Below are positions 19,725 through 41,027 of a stretch of DNA of 64,000 nt, one piece after another (positions within the stretch are counted from its first letter, which is position 1; each line of letters opens with the position of its first letter). Location of the stretch: positions 6,324,001 through 6,388,000 of the forward strand of contig OZ176050.1 in assembly GCA_964247055.1 (NCBI GenBank). The letters are read 5' to 3'. The DNA comes from Paragordius varius. Lineage: Eukaryota > Animalia > Nematomorpha. The notes beneath the pieces are model-generated. The model saw nothing but the letters and a program-made list of their open reading frames with translations. It had not been told where the DNA came from and did not search any database. Both the position numbers and the translations under genes were made by a program.

Positions 19725-22700
19725 ATGGAGTCAAAAGTATGGTTGATGACCCTGTTTATTTTAATTTTCAAAGGTAAGCCAATAAAATAATTTTAATATA
19801 TGAATAGGTTTTTACATCCATCATTTTCCTTATAATAAGTCTAAATCGAAAAGGCATAACAAGGAAAAATCAGATTTTTTATAATCTTAAAATTGCGCAT
19901 GGTTGTGTTTTGTCCTTGTTACACCAAGCAAAAAATTACATATGCGGTACTCTTCCGAATATTTATAGGTTAAAATCGCAAAATTTGCTGACTTATTTGA
20001 TAATAACCTTTGAAAGTTTTTTTTAAAGTATTTTCGCAATTGATTGCAAAAATAAACAGTTTTTTAACTTTTATTTTCAATAACTTTTTAAAATCAATTA
20101 TTAATTTACCAATTTTTCACACAACCTAAATACCTTCGTTTTTTTTCCACAAAAAATATTTTTGACATGGATATTAGAAAAGTTACAATATGTTGACATA
20201 AAGTTTTTTTATAAAGGTATTTTTTATTTTATAAATATACATTGTTATATATCTGGACGGCGCCCCTATTCATTTCAGAAAGAGATGATGTCCTCCATTG
20301 TATTACCTGCTGAATATCGGGGGACAGATAATATCTTTTATAAGTCGACTTTTATCAAAATAAATTAATACCATCTTTCTCTTTGATAAGTCATGATACT
20401 GTATTTTTAAGGTAGGTATATAGGAAACGGAAACGGCTTGCTATTTAAAATACCTGTTTAAAATTTAATCTGTAATAAAATGTATTGTCATTTATATGGT
20501 TATGATTTTATATATATATATATATATATATTAAATTATTTTGGGTGATTACTTTTTAATTATATCGTATAAATTTTTATATAAATTTTAATATTTTTAT
20601 AGTAAATTTGTTGGACACGAGAAACGAGCTTAGCCTGGAATGGGCACATTTTCGACCCAATGCTGATCCTTCTGAAACTAATCGTGGGGTATGTATATAT
20701 TACTTTTATAAATGTTTCATTTAATATATCTTCAATTTTAAAGAGAATAAACGTAACATAATTGTAGGGGAGGTAAGTATAGAATAGAGGTATAAGGTGA
20801 AGTAGGGATTATTTTTAACAAATATCAATCAAACAATGTATGATTAACGCGTGAGTAATTATACAAACAAACATAAATGAATTGATTCGTTCAATTTATG
20901 TACAAAAAGTGTTGTTATATTACATAAAGATTAAGAAAAGATTTTCCCTAACAATAGTACTTAATAATATAAGATTTGCTAAATAAATATATATATGTGT
21001 ACCTTAACACACACCTATACAGTTTTTTGTTTGTTTAGGCCGTTTTTCATAGATGTTACACATTTATTTATTTATACGTAACTTTTTAACGGTAGTCATG
21101 TTTTAGCTCTTGAACTTTATACAATCTAAAAATATAAACGGGATTATATTTATACTTAATCACGTAGCCTAATTTATATGGTAACAAAATATTCCGTGCG
21201 TTTTTTTGCACACACAAATGCTTAACACTTAAACTTCCGCGTCTCTTTTATATGTGCTTTAGGTGCGTATAACTTATATATTTTGAGAGGTCTTTATACC
21301 TTGCTATTGTTTATAACTTAATTATGATTAGAATATAACTTCTTTCGTATCCATGTAAAATAATGGATGTAATAAACAATAGAAATGTATATTCCCATTA
21401 AAGAAGCATTGTTTTTGTCATGTTTGTGTCAACGGAACACATATTTGACATTAATTCTAATATAGGTGCAAGTTAGCAAACATATTTAAGCTTGAAAAAC
21501 AAAAATATCCTAAGATTGTATACGATGTTAAAATTTTCGATTAGAAGAATCGATATCTATCTAAAATAACTTTATAACACAAACATTGATTTATGTTGGC
21601 TATCAAACTCTTAATTAATGTACTTTTAACTTTAGTTGTAGTGATATAAATACCATTTAAAGGAAGTACTTTAACAGCCATGTTAAATTTTAGTATATAT
21701 GGTACTAATTTTATCATGTGGCTATTAATAAACTTTAATTAAATTTTAAGAGTGTTTAGTTTGTTGTAAAGATGAGATAAGAGGTCAACATTGTTTCACT
21801 ATCTATCTTTATTATTAAATTTTAAGAAAAGAAATGGAATGAAAAACATAATTAAATTATTATAATATTGCCGCTTAAGAATCATGTTGATAAGTCTTGA
21901 AACTGATCATTTTAAAATTGGTCATAAACTGTAAAACAAATTGCCATTTTTCTTTGATCTTTTTTTACCGTCGCTTGTATTAAAAATATTTTATACAATT
22001 CTAATAAGAATATTAAATCGTTCAAACAAGAATTTAAAATATATAGTTTATTCAATCTGTAAAAGTGCATTTTTGATTGATGTAACGGCTAATGCGAGTT
22101 TATTATTTTTAATCTATTATGTAAACATCATTGGTGTATAAATATAATTTCTTTTTTTAACAAAATAAAATATAATTTGATCATAAAAAATATAAAATTT
22201 TTATAAGATTCAAAATCTCGATTGTATAAATTGATCCACCGTTATATTTTGTTTAGTAATTAATATCACTGCAAAATTCATTATAAATAGCCTTTCATTG
22301 CCTTTAACCTTATGAATAATAATTGATTTTTTACGAAATGCCAACTAAAAACGTAGTATGGCATCAAATATTTTCTTTCATAAATAGCAACTTTGAATAA
22401 AAGTTTTAATATGGTATCTATGTGATAGATTTTTTATATTTTTCGCATAAACCTTCCATTTTTTTCTTTACACTTTGGTGAATATGTCAACTTGGTACAT
22501 TTTTCGCATCTATCATACATTTGTGAAAAATATTTTATATTTTTTCCTGGTCCCTAAGAATGTCTCCATGATGCATATATTAAAACATGAATAAATTTAC
22601 ACCTGGGTTTAAAAGTGTCTACTAAGCTAAAAATGCAAAATATTTCGAAAGAGTGATTTATGAAAAGCATAATATAAGATAAATGTTTTTAAGTTTATTT

Positions 22701-25700
22701 AGAGAAAAAGAGCCTAAAAAATTAGATTTTATAATATATAATAATTAAAAGCTAAATTGATAAAAAATATTTTGAGTGTTAGGTTAAAAGTCTACACTCG
22801 CATTCAGAGAGAAGTTAACATATTTTGTATTTGTACATATTAGGTATAACTGATAACAAATTTATGATATTGTATATGTTAATGCTTTTTTATCTTGTTT
22901 TTATATATATATTATGGTTATTTATATGTTAAACCTCAAACCTCTATTGTTTAAAAATTTATTTTTTTTACAAAATTGTTACGGTATTATACTACAACAT
23001 ATTAAGTATATAGTAATCATTGAACATGTTAATGCGATAAGGATAGGGAGTAATGTGAACGAAATTGCAAAATTTTTAACTATGTATGTCTAATCTCGAT
23101 TCAATCAACGTTAACTTTTTAATCCCCCACCCCTCTTGAAAATTGAATTTATGATTGCAAAAACATTATAAAATAATAATGATATATGGTTAATTACATT
23201 GTACGAGTATAATTTAATTATGTATGTACATATGTAATAAATTATAAAAAATAATGATTTTGAGGTAATTGAATTTGAATCCATACTATTTAGGCCTCTT
23301 TAACTGAAAAAAAAAACGATTATATGATTTATGTTTATTGTAAGTAACAAAGTATAATATGGATATATAAATATGTATCAATCTAGGTTTAGATATTACT
23401 GTCTTTTATGTTCCAGATACATTTATTAGTATACACATAAATAAAATTATAAACAAAATATACATTTATGTATTGAATCAATAATCGTACCGCTAGTCTA
23501 ATTTGGAACCGCATTTTTTAAAATAATGAGATTTAAAAGTTTTTTGTAGAGATGAGCATATGGCCCTTAAAAACAATGTAACAACATGTATATTTAGTAA
23601 TAATTTTTTACCTGAATCAAATAACGATACTAATTATTAACAATTGGCCAAATGCTTATACTGACCATATTGTCAATTATACATTATCTCAAACATAACA
23701 AGAAAGACATATTTTTTTAATCCTTATTTTTTCAAAAATAAATAAAATATAAACGTAAAAAATGTTGGACATGTGCATAAAATTTAATGTTATGTTGTTA
23801 CCTGTGTCCTTATTGCGAGATTATGTTTTTTACCTTTTAACAATAAATTTATAAAGTAACTTGTTTAAGGGTCACAAAACAAACATCATGAAAATACTCA
23901 ACTTTTATGAGATAACTAATCATAGCTTATAAAACAATTATATATGTTATTATATTGAATTCAGCCAAAATTATAATATGTTATGAATTTTCTATTACTA
24001 CAAGTAATCTTTGTCAAACGTAAAAAATAAAATTAAAATATAAACTAAAATTATTGTGCCATTTCATTAAATGTAATGTAAAGATCAGTGTTAATCCAGA
24101 TAATATATATATATATATATATATATAGCTAATTTTATGTGCAATTTAGTGGTTAGAAGAAACGTATTCGCACGTAGAAAATGAAACACTTGTTAATTGG
24201 CGCTCCTACGTAGTTTGTGACATGAATGACCCCACTTCCCACATAAACCATCGTGATAATTGGTTAAGGACGCCCATTGTAACACTCAAAGCCCCAAAAT
24301 CTCAGCTAACAAACAAAAACGATGTTGATGATGATAAGGGCAAAGAGTCGTTTGTTACGGGTATGAAGAGAATATACGTCCATTTGATTTACAGTATGAG
24401 AGATTGTGTCGGTCGAACCGACGAAGAATGTAAGGAAACGTTTGAAGTTTATTATGGACTTGTGGGCAGCCGGGCCAATTCACCCAAAGGTAACTACTCT
24501 CCGCTAAAATTTAATCCGTACAAAGTTGGTAAAGGAAGTGCTCCTCGACACATTAGCGATGAATGGATCTTGCTTGATCGAATAGCCGCGGCTCCGGATC
24601 AGAGCCCAAAGTCAAAAGCGTCAAAATCTAATTATGATGAACAGAGTCAGCAAAACAACATAATTATGAGTAAACGAACGTTATCGTTTGCATTTAACGC
24701 CTCAGAGTGGTCAGGCTTTCACCTCGCTTTCCATGATACAGGAGCGTGTTTATCGCTTCTGGCCGTTGAAGTATATAAGATTAATTATAAGCAACTAGGC
24801 GTTTAAAATCTTTTAATTCCGTTTTGGTGCGTGTTATTTCATTAAACATTTCTTGTTTTCCTAATAATAAATAAATGAGCTAATATTAAAATATATTTGA
24901 CCACTAAATATTACCGATATGCAATTAAACGATTTAACTTCTCAACGTATCTTGATTAAATTTTTTGGCCCTTATTTAACATTTAGTATATAAATTATTT
25001 TATTTTTAAGCCTTGATTTGATTCATTGCTACAGATTTACACATTGTACTGTCCCGAAGGCATACGAAATGGCGTTTGGTTACAAAATACACCGACAGGA
25101 TCGGATTTGACCTCAGTCATTAGTACGCGTGGGAGTTGTCTTCCCCATTCAACATATTTAACCCATTTACCCGATTTATTGGGCAGCATTAATGTTCCAA
25201 ATCATAAAAATAGTGTGACTGGCACGGCAACACCCAACTTATTTGACACAAATTACTTGTGTCAAAGTAATGGTCAATGGTTTAATGCTCAAACTAATAG
25301 AGTTGTAAATACGCTAAAAGACACCCTTTCACCCCATCAAATAGCTCAAGCCTATTATAATCAAAGTTGTTTCTGTGACCCGGGCTATCAACCAAATTTC
25401 TTAGTCATTAATACTAAAAAACATGACTCTTTATCACATGCTTCGGCAGCCCGTAGTATGTTGGATAATTGGTGCCAAGGTATATTCTTTATTGATTCAT
25501 ATTCATTTTTAAACAAAATTGCATGTACATATATAAATATGGTTTATTAAAAAATGTGCAAATATATTTCCAACTGAGGATGTTAAAAAGAGATTTGAAT
25601 GCCAAAAACATACATCGTTTAGGCAAAAGGCTTAGAATCAAATGAAATAAAATACCCTAGACTAAAATTCCCTAAAGTCACATATGCAGACACACAGAGA

Positions 25701-31700: not shown

Positions 31701-34700
31701 ACCCCCCCCCCCCCCATTAAATTCTTTCGACTCTATTATATATCTATTCACTTAAATAACACACTAGTTTAGTTATTTAACTGAATGAATTAACTTTAAA
31801 TTCTAAAACTATAAAAAAATAGCTAAAATATTTAAAATAAATCAATGAATTATTTATTAGGTTGAATGTTACACACAAACATACAGAGACGGAGAGTAAA
31901 TGGAATAAACTTCAAAGATGTCAAATGAAAATCCCTTTTACCAAAATTTTTAATTATTTAAATGAGCATGTCCTTTTTTTGATTGTGTATGGTCTTGGCT
32001 TAGTATTTTCAAAAAAATTTGCACATAATTTATCTGCTTTTTAGGATTTTTAGTTTAAATAGTAAAATGACACTTGACAGTTCTATTAATTGAAAAAAAA
32101 GCCTTTCATCAAAAAATTCAATGGAACAATTTATGAACCTATTATTTTAATTATGGAATGTTTTTTTAGCAATTAAGATAGGGAGAATAATAAATTTTGA
32201 AAAATTTTGGTATATTGCCTTAAAATGCTAAAAACATGCATTCGATTGCAACCAAATAATATACCATTTACAATTCAAATTCACCCTTGAACAATTCAAA
32301 TTCACCCTAAAAATAAATTATGAAATTTCAGTCTAATATCTCATCATTAAAATTAATTATATTTTTATGGCAAAGTTTATTCTTATTTTTTTGATTACAT
32401 ACAAAATTTCTTCTATTATTATAAAAATGTATAGGTAATATTTAATCTTAAAAAGCACATAATTTATTTTAGGGTGAATTTTAATTGTTCGAGGATGAAT
32501 TTGAATTGTTCGAAGATAAATTTAAACTGTAAATGGTATAATATGTTTTATATGATTTGTGTAGCATGTCCATACAACACATATAAACACTCTCACGGTA
32601 ATTATGAATGTCAATCCTGTCCGCCCAATAGTGAATCAAGCAGAGACAATCACAGAGACTTTCCAACTGTCATGTGCAACTGCAAAGCCGGGTTTTACAG
32701 ACCCGCTTCTAAATTTTATGCAGACACGGCTTGTCAAACCCCTCCCCCACCAGTTAAAAATTTAACGGTTCAACATTTGGATTCGAGTGAAATTATACTT
32801 GAATGGTTTGACTCTACTGCATCGATCAAACAACAAAATGATGGACCAGCTAAAATGAATAGCAGCAGTATTACGAATAATGAGGATTTATCTCTTCTTA
32901 CAGAACCGCATCTTTTCCCTCTCCAGTATCGCGTAACATGCGATGTATGTCCGTTTAACGTTGAGTAAGTCACTATATTTTAAAAAAATACTATATTTTT
33001 ATCAAATAAATTTTAGCTATAAATGGACCTCTTAAATTAATATTTTTTATATGAAAAGATATATACCGGACAGTGAAAACTTGAATGAAACATCGGTTAA
33101 TATTAAAAATTTAAATCCTGGCACAATCTATACATTCAATGTGTACAGTGAAAATGTCATATCAAGCATTGCTGGTTTAGCTAATCATGCAAGCATTACT
33201 ATGCAAACCAAATTTTATCGTAATTTACATTACAATAACCTTATTTTTGATAGATTATAATTTGAATTCTCGTAAAATCTAATATATTCAAAATTTGATA
33301 AAAGATGTCTGAAAAACTAATAATGTTTAAAACAAAAAAATTATTTTTTAGCCAAATTTGGACGCTCTTTGTTGCCTTTGTTTTATTATATAGTGCTATA
33401 TAACAATGAAATATGTTATGATAATTTGAACCACAACACTTTTTTGTGATAATTCCACGACACAAATATTTATTGGGTTTATTTTTAGTACCAATTTTAA
33501 TAACCGATACACGAATCAATAAAATCGGAACTGATTTCGTACAAATGGATTGGAGGATAGATGATGATGGATATCCCGACAATCAAACAATGGGCGTACG
33601 TTTTCAAATATATTATGAGCTGCTTATTACTGATGCTCAACAAAACGCCATACTTAATGTTCAAAATAATGGGGTGGTGTCTTACAAAGAAGTGGACACC
33701 CTTTTAACCACCACTGAATTAAATGGCCTCAAACCCGATTCTCGTTACAAGATTAAAGTAAATTAATTATCATTTCGAGAAAAAAAATAATTTATGCAAT
33801 AAATGATCAATAGTTTTAATATTTTTTTTCTATTTATAAAATTAATTTATAATTTTTATTAAGATACGTGCATTGACAAATGATGCATTTGGTGCATATT
33901 CCGAACCTGTGATATTCAAGACGCTGCCTTCCTCATCTTACGTATCTAATCCCGAAAGTAATTAATCCCTTTTTCCATTAACATTACATATTAATTTTCA
34001 CATAATTGTGAGTGTCTTGATTCGTAAAATCCCAAATGAATTAGTAATATAATTGATATTATATATCAACATTGTTTTAGTTTGTGTTTCCATATAATTG
34101 TCTAGATTTTAATCAATACCTTTTTTTTTCATACAAAACTTGACTTTTAGTGTAAAAATTGGCCTCAATATTGTATAAATATTTATTAGGCATTTTTGTT
34201 TGTCGATATTGAAATTCTGAAGGCCTGACGGTATAGTAGGTAGGGCGCAGGATTTTTACACTATGTGTGTGGAGTCGCAGAGTTTCAAGTTAGAAACTAC
34301 GCAATTTTTCCATCATCACTGCCTATAAGCTCTGGGCAGGCGAGTGTTAAAGCTTTCACAAGTCCGGATACAATTAAGTCCTTACCCTTTAATAAAAAGG
34401 AAAAAGAGACTCTAAATGTATATTTATTTGTTTTTTATTGTCGATATTAAAATTATAGGTTCTGTTTCAAACACTTTTGAAAAAACCGATAATAATCGAG
34501 ATAACATTACGAATATAGACACGGATTATGTAAACGATGTTGAAAATAATGCGGAAGCTAAGCAATCCCAAATTGGCCTAATTGTAGCGCGTTGTTTTAT
34601 AGTCCTTATATCTTTGCTCGGGATAATATCATTAACGGCGTATCTAGTTAAAAGGTAATTTCTTTTTCTCCAACTTTTTATGTATTAATGAGCCCCATGA

Positions 34701-37700
34701 TATATATTAGTTACATAAATATATTTATTATCGCATAATTAGGCGTAATAAAAAATGCCAAGGGAAATCTACGAGTGATTGTGATTCTTTGGAAGTTAAA
34801 ACGGGCCCAGAAGGTAAAATGAGTGATTTATGACTGCATACAATGTTGTAATTATAATTATATCCATATAAATGCGCATTCATTATGGCTATTCCTTTTG
34901 CTTTTAATTGTACGCTTTGCTTAATGCTTATTGCTTGCTTATTTATAATTACTACTAACACATCAAAAACATTTATATAGTTATGACACCATTATTTCCA
35001 CCTCCAATTTTACCACCGAGCGCATTTAACACTTTAGTCGCTTCTCAACAACCTTATGGGCATCACATACTACCCTTTTACAATGGCTTAGCCCCTCGGA
35101 ATGATTATATTATACATGCATCACACAATGAGAATAATACCAACACGCATGTTTATGAAGAAGAAAGAGATAGTATATATTATGGTGGTATGACAAACCA
35201 AAAGTCCAACACAGTCATAGATGGAAATCTCATGAATTACAATAGGACAGATATGAGCCTCAACCAAGAAATCTTGTCCACTAATGGAGAACAGAAACAA
35301 TGTTCAAGGCCTTATTTGACTAGTGCCATTCCTGGACAAATATTGCATCCTTACCAACAAACTTCAAATCCGCAAGAAAATCCTTATTACATGGCCGCCT
35401 CAATCCAACATAATGCTTTGCCCCCGCTTCCCCTATTCCCTTCCCACTCTCATCCATTTTATGGAACTGATTCTACCAATCACCAAATGTTGGATTACAA
35501 CAACAGATATTATGCTGTTGACAATTTGGATAACCAAAACTCTCAACCTCGAATATCCACATACTATTCGAGTTTAGAGGATGAAAGTATGACTTTAGCG
35601 GCGCACCTTAATAACATGGCGGCACACAAACGTAATAGTAAATACATTCATGCTAATCAAGTTATTGATCCACTTACAAATCAACATCATTTTATCCATT
35701 TTTTGGGGATGGAACGTGAAATAACTACAGCTACTGATGAAAGAATGTCAAATTTTGTCGCCCCAATGCATAATCAAATGGCTGATTTTGGGGCGGCAAC
35801 ATCTACGCTAAAACCTTCACTCGATTCAGGGTTTGGGAGTCAACATTCCGAACCTACAGGCCAAAAGCTGGAAAATCTTAAAGATGACCAACTTAATTGT
35901 CATAATTTGGTTACCACTAATTTGGACAATAAATCGATTAACGATGACTCGAAAAATTATCCATACCTAAACGATAATAGTTGTGTGAATGGCTTACCAC
36001 CTCTAAACAATTTTAATACAAATAATAACAATAATAATAATAATAATGGGAAGGATGATTTGAATCAATGTTATATAAAATATGCATTTAACAACACTAA
36101 TGTGTCTGACTCTAATCAGGCCGTATCACGCATAGATAATATTAATGGCTTTCATAACACTAACAAAGATGCGCTTGCTATATTTATTGATAATAAGGCT
36201 AAAACTAACCCAATAGATATATCACACACGATGATAGGTATTAAACGTTTTAAATATATTAGTTTTTTATTTCGGTCATTTAAATTAGTCTAAATAATAT
36301 ATATATTTCCAGGTAAAGGAAAACATTACTATCGAATGTTTTATGGGGCCAACAGGTATATCCAAGATCATCATAACAAAAAATCCAAAAATTCGCAGGT
36401 AATTGTTGCACTCAACAATTTTTTTTCTTAATACTTTTTTATACATATATAGTGGCGTTATTAAATTCCTTTAACGTTTATACATTTAGAATTCAAATTT
36501 TGGGACCTTTGAGCATCACCCAAGATTACGATCGGGAACTTGTAATGGGGCGAACAAAAGTAGTCTAAGACGTTCCTCTTGTTTGTTTGTGGCACCGAGT
36601 TTTAGCCGATCAGCCAATTCTCGCGACAGTCACACCTATGAAGAACCAGCTGTCATTCAAAACATGGCCATTCTACAATCATCTTCTATTCAAAATTATC
36701 CGGTACAGCTTAGTAAATCGAAACTTTTATATCTTGCAAAAAATTATGTGATATCGTTGCCAAGAACCGATCGAAATTATAAAAAATGAATAATGTAGAG
36801 GGTCGTTTCATACATATATTTTAAGCGATATCTAATGTTTGTATAATTATGCTAAAATGTCAAATATTTAATATGTCTGTTTCTGGGTATTTTTATTATC
36901 TTAATCACAAATTCTGCTCTTATTTTTTATCTTAAAGAGTTAAATTTTAAACATTACTATGTTAATATATATATTCATCCAATAACTTTTATATGGGTTA
37001 TGATGGGATTCGTCATATAACATTTTTTATTTTGATTAAAGGGTTTTGGTCAAATGGAAGCTATGTTCAAACAAATCGATCCACAAGTTGACGAATGTCG
37101 CATCTTATCAAATAGTCATGTATTGCTAAAGAAGGGAACATTTCTAAATGTTTATCGTGCTATTATGTGCAGTAACGTGGAAAGTAATGATATTAGAAAT
37201 ATGTCCTATTTTTGTGAAGCTTAAATCCTTTATATAAACCATTTTTATCATTTTTATTCTTGCCGTTTTAGGTGATGCCAATTCTAACCATAGCAATATG
37301 ATAAACCCAATAAAACGTATGGGAAACATTTTGAGTGATTTGAAATCTAGCACGGAATCAAATCATCAAACATCATTAGACAAAACGGGGTCTGAACAGA
37401 CGAATTCCAAAACAACAGGAACCGGTTTAACTAATGTTTGTGTTAAAACATTTATGATTAACACATTATCACCACCAGCAACAGGAGATAAAATACTGAA
37501 AAATTTGATTAAATTTGTCAACAAAGCCTTGACTTTGCAACACATTGCTAAATGTTTGAATAATGGCACGAAACAAAAAGAAACTAACAAAAAATGCGAT
37601 AATTCATTTATGTCCCAATCAGAGGAACAAAATTATTGCAAACATTTGATACGTTTTGTAGGTGTTTACCAAAAAAATTGCTTCATGCCAACATTGACGC

Positions 37701-40244
37701 ATAATTTTACCATTATAACGGAATTTTGTGAGAATGGTTCTCTCGAATCTTTTTTAAAGGTACAACTTATTTCTTACTTTATTTAAAATTTGTACATTCC
37801 TTTGAGTTGACTTTTTTTATTTTGAAAGGACATTTTTTAAAGTAAATAATCTCTGAACTAATTAGTTTTTTTAAATAAATTTTAAAAATTAGTCGTGAAA
37901 ATTCCTATTTTTAATTACCTTAATAAATAATATTTATATTAATTTGCATAGCACAATGAATACAAATTAACGCTAAACCAATTGTTGGAACTGTGTGCCG
38001 GAATTGCTAAAGGGATGGAAAAATTACATGAAATAGTTGGGCCAAATTTTTCCCATATGAAACTTACACCATGGCATGTCTATGTTGACCGACAAATGAA
38101 TTCCAGAATAGCTTCCATAAATGGTAGCATATGTATAATTTTAAACTATTTCTATTGGTAACGAAAATTTTTATAATTGTTTGCTTGAATTAAAAAGATT
38201 TAAACTAAATACAATTTAAAAGGCAATTAAATCAAAAATATAAAAGATAGCAAAACGCTAATTATATTTTTACATATAGCTTTCCATGATAACAATCTCA
38301 AATACATTATCAAAGATAGAGTTGGCTATAAATTAACGCCCCAAACTGGTGGAGCAGAACCAAATAATTATAAAGTAGATTTTTTCAAAATATTTATTGA
38401 AATTTATATATATAACGTACATAATATATACATATTTATTTAAACTTCTAACATTTAAATTATGTTATTACTAGGAAACAATTAAAATACCACTACGTTA
38501 TACTGCACCAGAATGCTTGGTGAACATACTTGAAAATAATATTTCAAATACTCAATTATTTGAGGACGCTCGTTACGGAAATAACCAACAAATGACATCC
38601 AACCCGCTAAAACTATTTAATCAAAGTAGTGATGTATGGAGTTTTGGTGTAATATGTTGGGACATTTTTAATTATTGCACCCTTAAGCCATATGAATTGT
38701 TGAACGGTAATGGACCTGCTTCGCTTGAACCAAAGTGTCTCCTAACTGCACTTTATAATCAATGTTATCGCCTTCCTCCACCTATGGTGAGTACAAAAAA
38801 AACAATAGTTTTAAATTATTTTTTTACAATTAATGTAGATTTATATGGTTTTAATTTATAACAGATGTGCCCGGAAATTTTGCATGAAATTATGATGTAT
38901 TGCTGGCATTTTGATCCAAACAAACGGCCAACATTTAGTCAATTGACTAAATTTTTGTGCGGAATACAAAAAAGAGAAAATCATTATATAATGGATTCAC
39001 CTGCATACATAAAGTAAAAATTTCATAGACCATCAAAAAATATTTTATTAATCCTTTTATACCAAACCATGATTAAATTTTTTTCAAACTTTGTAGAACA
39101 AATTAATGCTTTAAGTCGAATCAAATTTAAACGTAATTTTTTATGCCATAGTTGCTGAATATAACAATTTTATTCATATAACCGTTATTTATTTATAACA
39201 GATCAATTAACTATGATCCTGTCGGTGCTTCATGTTTTTCCGGATTAGAGGATTGGCTAAATTATCTTAAGTTGGGTCGGTATGCGCCTTTGTTTGAAGC
39301 ATTTAATGTTCGAAAATTGGAGGAACTGCTACGTATTACCTCGCATGAATCTATGGGTGAAGCCAGAGGCGTAGAAAGAATCAGACCTCTAACGCCCAAT
39401 CACCATTTATTAAATTTAATAAATTCCATGAGTATAACAAATTTAGCCCATAAAAATAAGCTCTATATGGGTCTCGAAACCATACGACAAAGTCTTGAAC
39501 CATTAGTGATGAAAAATAATCCAGATATGGAATACAATCAATTTTTACCCGTTCTTGCTTCTAATTGGCAAACCATTATAAGTGAATCGATGGTCGTGGA
39601 TTCGACAGCTTCCTTAAAAGACACCATGTTAATGCGTAACAAGCAAATGTCAAAAAAATCACCCGTCAAAAACACAAAAATGAAATCATCAGTCAAGAGC
39701 GGTAAAATAGCCAAGGAAAAGAAAAATAAATCTAATAATTCGCACCAGGAGAATCTAATAGGATTAGGTAAGAGTTAAACTTAATCCTAATACATTTATG
39801 ACAATAGTTTTATTAAAAGAGTGTAATTTCATATTATATAGGATAAAATATTTAATCCAAATTATAGATTCGCCTCCAAACGTAACAAAATCAAACAATT
39901 ATACAATGCCAGAAAGTGGATGCCATATAAATTTAACCATGTCTTTAAACAGTTCCACGGAATCATCAAATGGAACCAATTTTGAGGCAGAAACGATAGA
40001 ATTATCATCATCATCTAATAACAACAGATTACCAAATAATACACATAAAGAAACCGATATATTTAATGGTAGTACAATTAACACATCTTCCCAAGCTGCA
40101 ATGATGGTTTATCCCACTGTGATCCAAAACAATTATCATAAAAATGTCTGTAGTCCACAAAATTCTGATGTAACAAAAGCTACCCAATTATTTTGGCCCA
40201 CGTCTCATGATTCACATACACCTGTTAACGGATATTTAGTCTGA
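19725..40244 (+). CDS. Eph: Eph receptor-family protein with catalytically degenerate kinase domain (~2,080 aa). Exons: 19725-19773 (uncertain), 20603-20688, 24150-24770, 25035-25479, 32565-32964, 33059-33219, 33489-33757, 33864-33957, 34459-34654, 34743-34813, 34981-36237, 36313-36398, 36490-36702, 37042-37183, 37272-37759, 37952-38123, 38280-38374, 38475-38786, 38865-39013, 39202-39767, 39868-40244
   Basis: Complete Eph domain order: ligand-binding domain (VNLLDT..WLEE..RSYVVCD..DNWLRTP..YSMRDC..CKETF..GFHLAFHDTGACLSLLAVE), sushi/EGF Cys-rich region (CDPGY, CPYNTYK..CQSCPPNS..CNCKAGFYR), two FN3 domains, TM helix, HTYEEP, kinase fold (ITEFCENGSL, KIPLRYTAPE, SDVWSFGV, YRLPPPM, CWHFDPNKRPTFSQL), SAM domain (LEDWLNYLKLGRY) and C-terminal GYLV. 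Splice phases are consistent throughout (6249 nt). The first exon and two donor choices are uncertain. Confidence 0.92.
24104..24127. repeat. (TA)n microsatellite (similar tracts at ~1408-1430, ~8298-8335 and ~20510-20530)
   Basis: Direct reading of the sequence. Confidence 0.9.
32262..32538. mobile_element. 277-bp MITE (family C) with TACCATT termini and 21-bp subterminal repeats
   Basis: TA|TACCATTTACAATTCAAATTCACCCTTGAACAATTCAAATTCACCCTAAA ... inverted copy ending TGTAAATGGTA|TA. Confidence 0.85.
34222..34380 (+). repeat. Possible tRNA-derived SINE head / GC-richer island in an Eph intron
   Basis: GGCCTGACGGTATAGTAGGTAGGGCGCAGGAT resembles a tRNA 5' half with an A-box, and GAGTTTCAAGT is a weak B-box. 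There is no proper cloverleaf and only one copy in the window. Confidence 0.25.
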
Positions 40245-41027
40245 AAACAGACCAAATGTTAATATAGATTGATTGATTACCTTGGAGAGAGGAGAGAGTA
40301 AGTAATGAATGCATAATTTTCCGGTGCTTATATCATTCTCCAATTAAAATGCATATAAAATGTGAATATCACCAAAGTTATTGTGTATGTTAGTGATATA
40401 GTGCCAGATCTCAATCAAAAAGCGTTGATCAATGAGGGTTAAAGGCATCTACAATAACCATTTAATTGATGACAATTTATTTCCAATTGCATTTTATTTA
40501 TGACCAATTTTTTATGTTACAAATATGATATATATATGACAAATTTTTAATGTAAAAAATAAATTAATTAGTAAACAGTTTTATAAGTTGTGTGTGGGCT
40601 AATTATTTCAATCCGTTTTGTATAAATTAGCAGTGGACTTGTCATGCGTCGTGTTTAAGTTTTCAAAAGATGGTCTTATCAGTTTATTTATAAAGGTGAT
40701 AACCATAATTGATTTCGAATAAGGTCACAAGTTTTTCTGAATATTGCTTCAAGATTCTTTTTATGAAGGGAAAAGGAAAGTTTAATCTAGGGTTGGCCCT
40801 TGCCTAAAAGCTAATTAAAAGCGCTATTAAGTTAACCATAAACACCCAGCAAGAGTATGTTTTAATTATTATTATACTATCAAAAAGCATGAATGTTTCA
40901 TGGAATAATTGATTAATTTACGTAAAATATAATTAAAATTATTTATTCATTTTTTTGATCCATAGTTTCTAAATGAAAATAATGAAATACAATAAAAATA
41001 GATTATAAAACAAAAGGAAAAAGTAAA

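What the first reader, a model, noticed from the sequence alone, without database searches (positions are those of the whole stretch)
37042..39013. Invertebrate Eph pseudokinase: every catalytic motif except the beta3 lysine is lost
Seen: the Gly-rich loop reads KKGTFLNVYRA (canonical GxGEFGEVYRG), the beta3 Lys is kept (VCVKTF), the alphaC Glu is absent (FVNKAL for FLSEAS), the catalytic loop is HMKLTPWH for HRDLAARN (CAT ATG AAA at 38054-38062), and DFG is replaced (RIASING for KVSDFG). The C-lobe scaffold (KIPLRYTAPE, SDVWSFGV, YRLPPPM, CW..RPTF), SAM domain, GYLV tail and ectodomain are intact with no stops over ~2,080 codons, so this is not a decaying pseudogene. Known: the characterised kinase-dead Ephs are vertebrate EphA10 and EphB6, with different substitutions, while Drosophila Eph and C. 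elegans VAB-1 are active. Inference: an independently evolved kinase-dead Eph acting as a scaffold, co-receptor or ligand for reverse signalling.
Basis: partly seen in the sequence, partly recalled or inferred. Interest (0 to 1): 0.75.

Follow-up and report, generated by a model that had tools for sequence, protein, structure and literature searches.

The report
Kinase-dead Eph receptor of hairworms
A horsehair worm (phylum Nematomorpha) has an intact, conserved Eph cell-contact receptor whose kinase domain has lost the residues needed for catalysis; the hairworm Gordionus shares this state, so this is an invertebrate origin of a "dead" Eph receptor, known until now only from jawed vertebrates.

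Summary
Window 37042-39013 (+) carries six phase-consistent GT-AG exons of an Eph-type kinase domain. The catalytic loop reads HMKLTPWH (canonical HRDLAARN), the DFG position reads SIN, and the Gly loop reads KKGTFL. VCVK, the C-lobe, the SAM domain and an NGYLV tail are kept. The gene spans about 20.6-40.2 kb and has every Eph module.

The exhaustive protein search found one close relative, LOC135926139 of the hairworm Gordionus (51% identity in the ligand-binding domain). It is collinear exon by exon and also degenerate, but with different residues (HRRLRAAA; DFG lost; VAIK kept). The loss therefore most likely predates the split of the two hairworms.

Neither locus holds an alternative HRD/DFG exon. 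Every frame-breaking polymorphic indel listed lies in a predicted intron. The ligand-binding domain diverges at an ordinary rate, whereas the kinase domain is about 41-44% identical to active Ephs, which keep 67-90% among themselves.

The Gordionus domain is still predicted to fold as an Eph kinase. No second hairworm Eph was found, but absence is not proven. No RNA data were available, and catalytic inactivity is inferred from sequence. Earlier scan notes report other degenerate tyrosine kinases on other DNA of this genome; none reports this gene.

Verdict: real, a new variant of a known kind, moderately interesting.

The parts
20602..20688 (+). Ligand-binding domain, first exon found (the signal-peptide exon was not located)
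   Evidence: 69% identical to Gordionus P0001 residues 27-55; the AG acceptor and GT donor were read.
24150..24770 (+). Ligand-binding domain, main exon
   Evidence: Pfam Ephrin_lbd, 4.4e-20. It is 51% identical to Gordionus and 36-40% identical to mollusc and bee Ephs.
25035..25479 (+). Cysteine-rich region exon
   Evidence: Weak Pfam Ephrin_CRD hit; 39-45% identical to Gordionus; phase-1 donor matches the next acceptor.
32565..33935 (+). Ephrin_rec_like / EGF-like module and two fibronectin-III modules, in several exons (32565-32964, 33059-33218, about 33470-33760, about 33858-33935). The inner boundaries of the last two exons are approximate.
   Evidence: Pfam Ephrin_rec_like, 1.7e-6; collinear tblastn hits to Gordionus residues 422-716.
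34461..34655 (+). Transmembrane exon: a hydrophobic stretch followed by KR
   Evidence: Translation; aligned to the Gordionus transmembrane segment.
34741..34812 (+). Small juxtamembrane exon (motif SDCDSLEVKTGPE)
   Evidence: 67% identical to Gordionus residues 818-841. A similar motif occurs in mollusc Ephs (alignment).
34980..36237 (+). Lineage-specific low-complexity juxtamembrane insert (about 419 codons); the start is approximate
   Evidence: Open frame. It begins with VMTPLFPP, as in Gordionus. The listed polymorphisms are 11 synonymous to 7 non-synonymous.
36313..36398 (+). Mini-exon of the juxtamembrane region
   Evidence: GT-AG junctions with matching phases read. Three polymorphic indels (36411, 36416, 36419) lie just after it, in the intron.
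36490..36702 (+). Juxtamembrane exon with the conserved HTYEEP tyrosine motif (the JX2 site of Ephs; the JX1 Tyr is lost)
   Evidence: Sequence. HTYEEP is identical in Gordionus and aligns to H/FTYEDP of active Ephs.
37042..37183 (+). Kinase exon 1: degenerate Gly loop (KKGTFL) and the beta1-beta2 strands
   Evidence: 57% identical to Gordionus, with NVYRAIMC identical; aligned to GGGEFGDV of active Ephs.
37272..37759 (+). Kinase exon 2: long insert, then VCVK (beta3 Lys), alphaC (FVNKAL, no Glu), a second insert and the hinge (ITEFCENGSLESFLK)
   Evidence: Weak Pfam PK_Tyr_Ser-Thr hit; the C-terminal part aligns to EphB1 and to Gordionus.
37952..38123 (+). Kinase exon 3: alphaE, catalytic loop HMKLTPWH and the DFG-equivalent SIN
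   Evidence: phmmer register against solved kinases; alignment to Gordionus and active Ephs.
38280..38374 (+). Kinase exon 4: activation segment
   Evidence: The 156-base intron 38124-38279 has in-frame stops. Gordionus has no intron here.
38475..38786 (+). Kinase exon 5: KIPLRYTAPE, a roughly 30-residue insert, SDVWSFG and YRLPPPM
   Evidence: Pfam PK_Tyr_Ser-Thr, 6.6e-8; PDB hits to Eph and other tyrosine kinases; 53% identical to Gordionus.
38865..39013 (+). Kinase exon 6: alphaH-alphaI (CW..RPTF)
   Evidence: Pfam PK_Tyr_Ser-Thr, 1e-6; 56% identical to Gordionus.
39202..39767 (+). SAM domain exon plus a linker
   Evidence: Pfam SAM_1 and SAM_2; 53% identical to Gordionus over the SAM core.
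39868..40244 (+). Last exon: tail with the conserved HINLTMSLNSS motif, the terminal NGYLV (PDZ-binding type) and the stop codon
   Evidence: Sequence. The Gordionus tail ends in NGFLV; mollusc, flatworm and rotifer Ephs end in EGFLV, DGYLV and NGFLV.

Best explanation
This is the horsehair-worm orthologue of the protostome Eph receptor, and its kinase domain has become a pseudokinase. The catalytic Asp (HRD to HMK), the metal-binding Asn (to His), the DFG Asp (to Ser), two of three Gly-loop glycines and the alphaC Glu are gone. The beta3 Lys, the hydrophobic core, the C-lobe, the ephrin-binding ectodomain, one juxtamembrane tyrosine motif (HTYEEP), the SAM domain and the PDZ-type tail are kept. 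The Gordionus orthologue lacks the same catalytic residues but carries different replacements. Catalysis was therefore most likely lost before the two hairworm lineages split, and the freed positions then drifted while the fold stayed under selection. Inferred mechanism: the receptor still binds ephrin at cell contacts and clusters. It then signals without its own catalysis in one or more of three ways. It may act as a docking platform, with HTYEEP phosphorylated in trans by a cytoplasmic tyrosine kinase and with SAM and PDZ partners bound. It may act as an adhesion or repulsion partner. It may act as the 'ligand' that triggers reverse signalling in ephrin-bearing cells. Shown here: gene structure, motif losses, orthology, conservation pattern and predicted fold of the orthologue. 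Inferred: lack of activity, partners, and whether it is the only Eph.
For: The one close relative is Gordionus LOC135926139, collinear over all exons. It shows HRRLRAAA, loss of DFG, alphaC Glu replaced by Thr and VAIK kept, in all three isoforms. No HRDxxxxN, DFG or GxGxFG exon occurs in any frame of the window or of the 76-kb Gordionus locus. Every listed frame-breaking indel polymorphism lies in a predicted intron. The exonic ones keep the frame: +AAA at 40158 and a +1/-1 pair at 37603/37610. The juxtamembrane insert shows 11 synonymous to 7 non-synonymous changes. Divergence is domain-specific. Against a mollusc Eph, active Ephs keep 67-90% identity in the kinase domain with 27-57% in the ligand-binding domain. 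Gordionus has 44% and 39%, and the window about 41% and 36%. The Gordionus terminal branch is 6.3 substitutions per site against a median of 0.048. The kinase-like domain is still 47% identical between the two hairworms, far above the barely alignable juxtamembrane insert. The AlphaFold model of the Gordionus domain has pTM 0.66 and core pLDDT 75-90, and its best 50 Foldseek matches are all Eph kinase domains with target-normalised TM-score 0.72-0.88.
Against: No RNA run holds the locus. All four runs laid are genomic DNA, so splicing and expression in this species are inferred. Catalytic inactivity is a sequence inference, and some kinases lacking canonical residues are active. The retained beta3 Lys could point to residual nucleotide binding. 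The fold was predicted only for the Gordionus protein and with an alignment of active Ephs, which biases it towards the kinase fold. The window's own spliced protein was not folded. The N-lobe alignment (beta3, alphaC) is ambiguous. Loss in the common ancestor is the parsimonious reading, but two independent losses are not excluded.
Confidence: 0.8

Rival explanations
1. It is an EphB6-like modulator. Hairworms would also have a catalytically active Eph paralogue elsewhere in the genome, and this dead receptor would work only as its co-receptor, being trans-phosphorylated by it.
For: This is how vertebrate EphB6 and EphA10 are thought to act (PMC7586955). The HTYEEP tyrosine motif is retained. 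Only 64 kb of this genome could be read.
Against: The exhaustive HMMER search with the window's ligand-binding exon found a single hairworm cluster. Every named hit among the 20 further hits looked up is an arthropod, apart from one fish. No second Gordionus protein appears among the best 120 hits to the Gordionus kinase+SAM region. No scan note in about 1,680 windows mentions another Eph. Single Ephs are recorded for C. elegans and Schistosoma mansoni, and from my own knowledge for Drosophila. All of this is indirect evidence.
Confidence: 0.3
2. The domain is still an active kinase and uses a non-canonical mechanism, with other residues standing in for the missing ones.
For: The beta3 Lys is conserved in both hairworms. 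Some proteins once classed as pseudokinases have been found to catalyse; HER3 and JAK2 JH2 are cited in PMC7586955.
Against: The catalytic base, both metal ligands (the Asn and the DFG Asp) and the alphaC Glu are all missing. The replacements differ between the two species (K/H/S against R/A/G or a deletion), which is what unconstrained positions look like. The Gly loop is degenerate in the window.
Confidence: 0.06
3. The gene is a recently inactivated or unexpressed pseudogene, or the exon model is wrong.
For: No transcript evidence was available for this species. The kinase exons are very divergent.
Against: About 2,000 open codons lie in a 26-30% GC sequence. All junctions read are GT-AG and phase-consistent. 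The exons are collinear with an annotated Gordionus protein. The listed polymorphic indels avoid exons or preserve the frame. Synonymous changes are in excess in the insert exon.
Confidence: 0.04

Closest known systems
Gordionus sp. m RMFG-2023 LOC135926139 (XP_065317929.1; three annotated isoforms), named 'uncharacterized protein'
   Same: It is the orthologue. Its exons are collinear and it has the same modules. Shared features include the juxtamembrane motifs, the inserts in the kinase domain, the HINLTM.LNSS tail motif and an NG(F/Y)LV end. Identity is 51% in the ligand-binding domain and 47% in the kinase-like domain. It also lacks the HRD Asp, the catalytic-loop Asn, the DFG Asp and the alphaC Glu.
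   Different: The replacing residues differ: HRRLRAAA against HMKLTPWH, and DFG deleted or GLC against SIN. Its Gly loop is better kept (GRGGFT), and it has VAIK rather than VCVK. Two introns of the window (38124-38279 and 39768-39867) are absent there. Its own source names it only 'uncharacterized protein' or 'unnamed protein product', and my paper searches returned no description of it as a pseudokinase.
Vertebrate EphB6 and EphA10 (receptor tyrosine pseudokinases)
   Same: They are full-length Eph receptors with an intact ectodomain, SAM domain and PDZ-type tail and a kinase fold that lacks catalytic residues. EphB6 keeps the juxtamembrane tyrosines that other kinases phosphorylate.
   Different: They lost the beta3 Lys (VAVH, VAIQ) but keep an intact Gly loop. 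The hairworm proteins do the reverse. Their catalytic loops (HRGLAARH, HRSLSAHS) and DFG replacements (GFG, RLG) are different. They arose within gnathostome Eph paralogue families alongside many active Ephs. The hairworm gene sits on its own very long branch outside the vertebrate clades and may be the only Eph.
Caenorhabditis elegans VAB-1 (the single nematode Eph; nematodes are generally regarded as the sister phylum of hairworms)
   Same: It is the single protostome-type Eph of a related phylum. From my own knowledge (George et al. 1998, Cell 92:633, not read here), kinase-domain alleles of vab-1 are weaker than null alleles. Part of its function is therefore kinase-independent, which is a precedent for an Eph working without catalysis.
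   Different: VAB-1 has the canonical motifs and is an active kinase. The hairworm receptor has none of the catalytic residues.
Other receptor pseudokinases (HER3, PTK7/CCK4, ROR, RYK)
   Same: They are receptors with a retained kinase fold that signal by scaffolding or through partner kinases (review PMC13259870, abstract seen).
   Different: They belong to different receptor families, and each has an ancient, conserved dead state across animals. Here an otherwise universally active family has lost catalysis in one phylum.

Membership tests
Eph receptor family | N-terminal ephrin-binding (Ephrin_lbd) domain | tested here: met
   Pfam PF01404, 4.4e-20 and 72.9 bits against a cut-off of 27.
Eph receptor family | Cysteine-rich / Ephrin_rec_like module followed by two fibronectin-III modules | tested here: met
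   PF07699, 1.7e-6 and above its cut-off. The FN3 pieces give no Pfam hit on their own, but they align collinearly to the Gordionus protein, whose precomputed domains include PF00041.
Eph receptor family | Single transmembrane segment, then a juxtamembrane segment with two tyrosines (YxDPxTYEDP) | tested here: inconclusive
   A hydrophobic segment is present. Only the second tyrosine motif (HTYEEP) is kept, and the first Tyr is Ser. A roughly 450-residue lineage-specific insert precedes it.
Eph receptor family | Eph-type tyrosine-kinase fold with the signatures KIPIRWTAPE, SDVWSYG and YRLPPPM | tested here: met
   KIPLRYTAPE, SDVWSFG and YRLPPPM are present. PF07714 hits occur in three exons. 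The orthologue's model matches Eph kinase structures best.
Eph receptor family | C-terminal SAM domain and PDZ-binding tail | tested here: met
   SAM_1 and SAM_2 hits lie above their cut-offs. The NGYLV end aligns with EGFLV, DGYLV and NGFLV of other protostome Ephs.
Pseudokinase (sequence definition: at least one of beta3 Lys, HRD Asp, DFG Asp missing) | HRD catalytic Asp absent | tested here: met
   HMK at 38054-38062; the register is fixed by phmmer alignment to solved kinases and by MAFFT alignment to ten Ephs.
Pseudokinase (sequence definition: at least one of beta3 Lys, HRD Asp, DFG Asp missing) | DFG Asp absent | tested here: met
   RIA-SIN aligns to RIS-DFG and KVA-DFG.
Pseudokinase (sequence definition: at least one of beta3 Lys, HRD Asp, DFG Asp missing) | beta3 Lys absent | tested here: not met
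   VCVK is retained (the most likely register), and Gordionus has VAIK. Absence of this residue is not required when the other two are missing.
Pseudokinase (functional definition) | No phosphotransfer activity | not testable with these tools
   This needs a recombinant protein assay.
EphA10 / EphB6 orthology group | Descent from the gnathostome EphA10 or EphB6 lineage with their characteristic substitutions | tested here: not met
   The substitutions differ. The closest relatives of the ligand-binding domain after Gordionus are arthropod Ephs. The kinase-domain tree places Gordionus outside all vertebrate clades.

The most novel reading that the evidence does not exclude
The catalytically dead gene is the only Eph receptor of the phylum Nematomorpha, so hairworms run Eph/ephrin contact signalling with no receptor kinase activity at all. 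It would also be one case of a lineage-wide decay of tyrosine-kinase catalysis: scan notes on the same genome report a degenerate JAK JH1 domain, an EGFR-like receptor and other RTK-like genes with degenerate motifs. That would make hairworms a natural knock-out for asking what phosphotyrosine-independent Eph signalling can do.
Probability: 0.4. Interest if true: 0.75.

Novelty: new variant of a known kind. Interest (0 to 1): 0.58.

Why it matters
Eph receptors are the largest receptor tyrosine kinase family. The published evolutionary survey concludes that their VAIK, HRD and DFG motifs are present in every phylum it examined and that kinase-dead Ephs go back only to jawed vertebrates (PMC6993872). 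A dead Eph conserved in two hairworm genera shows that the switch from kinase to pseudokinase happened a second time, with a different pattern of losses: Lys kept and Gly loop lost, instead of the reverse.

If it proves to be the sole Eph of the phylum, it is a natural experiment on kinase-independent forward signalling and on reverse signalling. Both are debated for vertebrate Ephs and hinted at by C. elegans vab-1 genetics. The residues that stay conserved between the two hairworm proteins mark candidate non-catalytic interaction surfaces. These are the alphaH-alphaI region, NVYRAIMC, HTYEEP, the SAM domain and the tail motifs.

It also corrects a database gap, since the source records name the Gordionus orthologue only 'uncharacterized protein'.

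Tried and rejected
1. RNA evidence. The look-up of sequencing runs returned no RNA holder. The four runs laid are genomic contigs that span the introns, so splicing could not be confirmed. They did give useful polymorphisms.
2. Word search with the exon-2 ORF found nothing, not even the window's own sequence. The window's protein is not in the collection, so no reference for the spliced protein exists.
3. phmmer of exon 2 against the PDB suggested a different alphaC register with an Asp. I rejected it in favour of the register bridged by Gordionus, but it is not excluded.
4. MAFFT --addfragments misplaced the N-terminal half of exon 2, so I did not use that part.
5. The idea that the window is a flatworm (AT-rich, long inserts) was dropped once the only close relative proved to be Gordionus. 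Papers on the Schistosoma kinome and planarian Ephs say nothing relevant about kinase state.
6. Alternative catalytic exon: motif scans of all six frames of the window and of L001 found none.
7. One paper search for the genome's tiny introns and a look at a parasitoid-genomics preprint gave nothing. One paper reading failed on a term that was too short.
8. dN/dS against Gordionus was not attempted, because synonymous sites are saturated at about 50% protein identity.
9. The look-up of encoding contigs on P0001 failed; the longest isoform, P0038, worked.

Full report
**What is in the window**

The window is very AT-rich, 23-34% GC in 2-kb bins. It carries a long multi-exon gene on the + strand. 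Stop-free stretches and their translations, together with the DNA at the junctions, give a chain of GT-AG exons whose phases agree at every junction I read.

- Two exons of the ligand-binding domain lie at 20602-20688 and 24150-24770.
- The cysteine-rich region lies at 25035-25479.
- The Ephrin_rec_like and fibronectin-III exons lie at 32.5-33.9 kb.
- A transmembrane exon lies at 34461-34655, followed by a 24-codon juxtamembrane exon at 34741-34812.
- A roughly 419-codon low-complexity insert ends at 36237, followed by a mini-exon at 36313-36398.
- The juxtamembrane exon with HTYEEP lies at 36490-36702.
- Six kinase exons lie at 37042-37183, 37272-37759, 37952-38123, 38280-38374, 38475-38786 and 38865-39013.
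- A SAM exon lies at 39202-39767, and a last exon at 39868-40244 ends in NGYLV and a stop.

Pfam recognises Ephrin_lbd (4.4e-20), Ephrin_rec_like, PK_Tyr_Ser-Thr in three kinase exons, and SAM_1/SAM_2. The signal-peptide exon was not located.

**The observation**

CAT ATG AAA sits exactly at 38054-38062. The register does not rest on eye alone. phmmer aligns SHMKLTPWHVYVDRQMNSRIAS column for column with IHRDLKPANVLLDDDMEARISD of a solved kinase. A MAFFT alignment with ten Ephs puts HMKLTPWH under HRDLAARN and SIN under DFG.

The catalytic Asp is therefore Lys, the metal-binding Asn is His and the DFG Asp is Ser. The Gly loop GxGxxG reads KKGTFL.

Four small corrections apply.

- Kinase exon 1 ends at 37183, not at the stop at 37222.
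- 'RIASING' runs one codon into an intron; spliced, it reads RIASIN-A.
- The alphaC register is ambiguous by itself, because offers an Asp.
- The beta3 Lys (VCVK) is the most likely register, by similarity to LVTVAIKK of the orthologue, but not the only one.

**Whose gene it is**

An exhaustive HMMER search of 1.84 billion representative proteins with the ligand-binding exon gave a single strong hit (7e-46, 51% identity). This is P0001, 1765 residues, which is LOC135926139 of the horsehair worm Gordionus sp. m RMFG-2023, named only 'uncharacterized protein'.

tblastn of P0001 on the window is collinear over all modules. That includes lineage-specific pieces such as SDCDSLEV.TGPE, VMTPLFPP, the inserts inside the kinase domain and a tail motif HINLTM.LNSS. 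The next-best ligand-binding hits that carry names are arthropod Ephs from a copepod, an ostracod, a mite, a bee, a springtail and a centipede.

Other follow-ups of this scan had independently called this genome a relative of Gordionus. The window is thus a nematomorph, and the gene is the orthologue of the Gordionus gene.

**The orthologue is also dead, in a different way**

In Gordionus the Gly loop is GRGGFT and VAIK is intact. AlphaC reads FLRTAT, with Glu replaced by Thr. The catalytic loop is HRRLRAAA, and DFG is missing (KIS-GLC against KV.DFGLS). All three annotated isoforms carry the same residues.

The same four functional positions are lost in both species, yet they hold different residues. 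That is what is expected if catalysis was lost once, before the split, and the positions then drifted. Two independent losses cannot be excluded.

Six-frame motif scans find no HRDxxxxN, DFG or GxGxFG anywhere in the 64-kb window or in the 76-kb Gordionus locus L001.

**Not a decaying pseudogene**

- The open exons are far longer than chance allows at this composition.
- Four public DNA runs of the same and a related label hold the locus as genomic contigs that span the introns.
- Every frame-breaking indel listed falls in a predicted intron: 36411, 36416, 36419, 36933, 37211, 37789, 37812, 38386 and 38405.
- The only exonic indels listed are an in-frame +AAA at 40158 and a +1/-1 pair seven bases apart at 37603/37610, which restores the frame.
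- In the juxtamembrane insert exon the listed substitutions are 11 synonymous to 7 non-synonymous. That is a ratio of roughly 0.2 per site, by my own estimate.
- Only 40 of 278 substitutions and 12 of 66 indels were printed, so the kinase exons themselves are barely sampled.

**Domain-specific relaxation with retained fold**

Against a mollusc Eph, active Ephs from a flatworm, a rotifer, a starfish, a bee, a frog and a fish keep 67-90% identity in the kinase domain. Their ligand-binding domains are 27-57% identical.

Gordionus shows an ordinary 39% in the ligand-binding domain but only 44% in the kinase domain. The window's exons, scored one by one, give 36-40% and about 41% over the alignable parts. 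In a maximum-likelihood tree of kinase domains the Gordionus terminal branch is 6.3 substitutions per site, against a median of 0.048. The acceleration is therefore specific to the kinase domain and is not just a fast lineage.

The domain is nevertheless 47% identical between the two hairworms, with stretches such as NVYRAIMC and the alphaH-alphaI region near 56-80%. The neighbouring insert is barely alignable.

An AlphaFold2 model of Gordionus residues 1070-1462, built with an alignment of 24 active Ephs, has pTM 0.66. Its core pLDDT is 75-90 and the inserts are disordered. Its best 50 Foldseek matches in the PDB are all Eph kinase domains, with target-normalised TM-score 0.72-0.88. The alignment used biases this towards the kinase fold, so it shows compatibility, not proof.

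**How it probably works**

What is retained points to a receptor that still binds ephrin and still assembles partners.

- The ectodomain is intact.
- The ancestral juxtamembrane motifs are kept, including the JX2-type tyrosine (HTYEEP, identical in both hairworms).
- The kinase fold, the SAM domain and the protostome-type (E/D/N)G(F/Y)LV PDZ-binding end are kept.

By analogy with EphB6, the tyrosine would be phosphorylated by another kinase. EphB6 keeps its juxtamembrane tyrosines and works with partner kinases (PMC7586955). A scan note places an ephrin gene about 2.4 Mb downstream in the same genome (not checked by me), so a ligand and reverse-signalling partner seems to exist. These steps are inference.

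**Is it the only Eph?**

The evidence is indirect.

- The exhaustive search with the window's ligand-binding exon found one hairworm cluster only. Every hit whose source names an organism is an arthropod, except one fish.
- No second Gordionus protein is among the best 120 hits to the Gordionus kinase+SAM region. That list is truncated and has a length floor of about 970 residues.
- No scan note mentions another Eph.
- A single Eph is recorded for C. elegans and Schistosoma mansoni.

I put 'sole Eph' at somewhat better than even. Whole-assembly scans are needed.

**Comparison with what is known**

Arcas, Wilkinson and Nieto (PMC6993872) report VAIK, HRD and DFG in Ephs of all phyla they sampled, from sponges to human. 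[quoted passage not shown] Nematomorpha does not appear in the passages I read.

Table 1 of PMC7586955 gives the vertebrate motifs.

| Receptor | Gly loop | beta3 | alphaC | Catalytic loop | DFG |
|---|---|---|---|---|---|
| EphA10 | GGGRFG | VAVH | E | HRGLAARH | GFG |
| EphB6 | GTGSFG | VAIQ | R | HRSLSAHS | RLG |

Both vertebrate proteins lost the Lys and kept the Gly loop. The hairworm proteins keep the Lys, and the window's protein has lost the Gly loop. The hairworm gene is therefore not a member of either vertebrate group. It is a separate, convergent Eph pseudokinase.

Scan notes on the same genome report further tyrosine kinases with degenerate motifs: JAK JH1, an EGFR-like receptor and two RTK-like genes (not checked by me). 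If they hold, the Eph case may be part of a wider remodelling of phosphotyrosine signalling in hairworms.

- No transcript data were available.
- Only 64 kb of this genome was visible.
- I never built, searched or folded a joined spliced protein. The fold evidence therefore comes from the Gordionus orthologue only.

**Verdict**

This is a real, conserved, independently evolved Eph pseudokinase of horsehair worms. It is a new variant of a known kind and of moderate interest. Its interest rises if it proves to be the only Eph of the phylum.

Noticed in passing
window 39900-39960 (tail exon) and Gordionus P0001 about residues 1640-1655: A short motif after the SAM domain, HINLTM(S/T)LNSS, is nearly identical in the two hairworm proteins although the surrounding tail is barely alignable. 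It is an unassigned, lineage-specific conserved element; NLT and NSS look like N-glycosylation sequons, but the segment is cytoplasmic.
   Followed up: no
window 38124-38279 and 39768-39867; L001 63660-63938 and 65085-66011: Two introns of the window's gene (156 and 100 bases) have no counterpart in Gordionus, where the catalytic-loop and activation-segment region, and the SAM and tail region, are each a single exon. This indicates intron gain or loss between hairworm genera.
   Followed up: partly
window 34980-36237: A roughly 419-codon low-complexity, N/Q/P-rich insert lies between the membrane and the kinase domain. It is barely alignable to Gordionus beyond its first eight residues, yet shows 11 synonymous to 7 non-synonymous polymorphisms, so it is coding and constrained.
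   Followed up: partly
window 37603-37610: One haplotype in run X1 carries a +1 insertion and a -1 deletion seven bases apart. Together they replace three residues (SFM by IIL) in the insert after alphaC and restore the frame.
   Followed up: partly
window 34400-40300, runs X3/X4 and X5: Contigs of sample S2 are mostly only 90-99% identical to the window. A run labelled as a different organism (X5) holds the locus at low depth with three quarters of its laid contigs running on into unlike sequence. This suggests divergent haplotypes, a cryptic sister species, or hairworm DNA inside a host sample.
   Followed up: no
window about 56804 and about 63097, minus strand: Identical translated stretches about 6.3 kb apart mark a recent duplication. 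It is probably the GUSB duplication that another note on this window mentions.
   Followed up: no
L001 (Gordionus OX940785.2, 20353499-20429512): The Gordionus orthologue spans 56 kb, against about 20 kb or more in the window, with the same 26% GC. Its introns before the main ligand-binding exon (about 22.7 kb) and before the Ephrin_rec_like exon (about 10.8 kb) are much longer than in the window.
   Followed up: no
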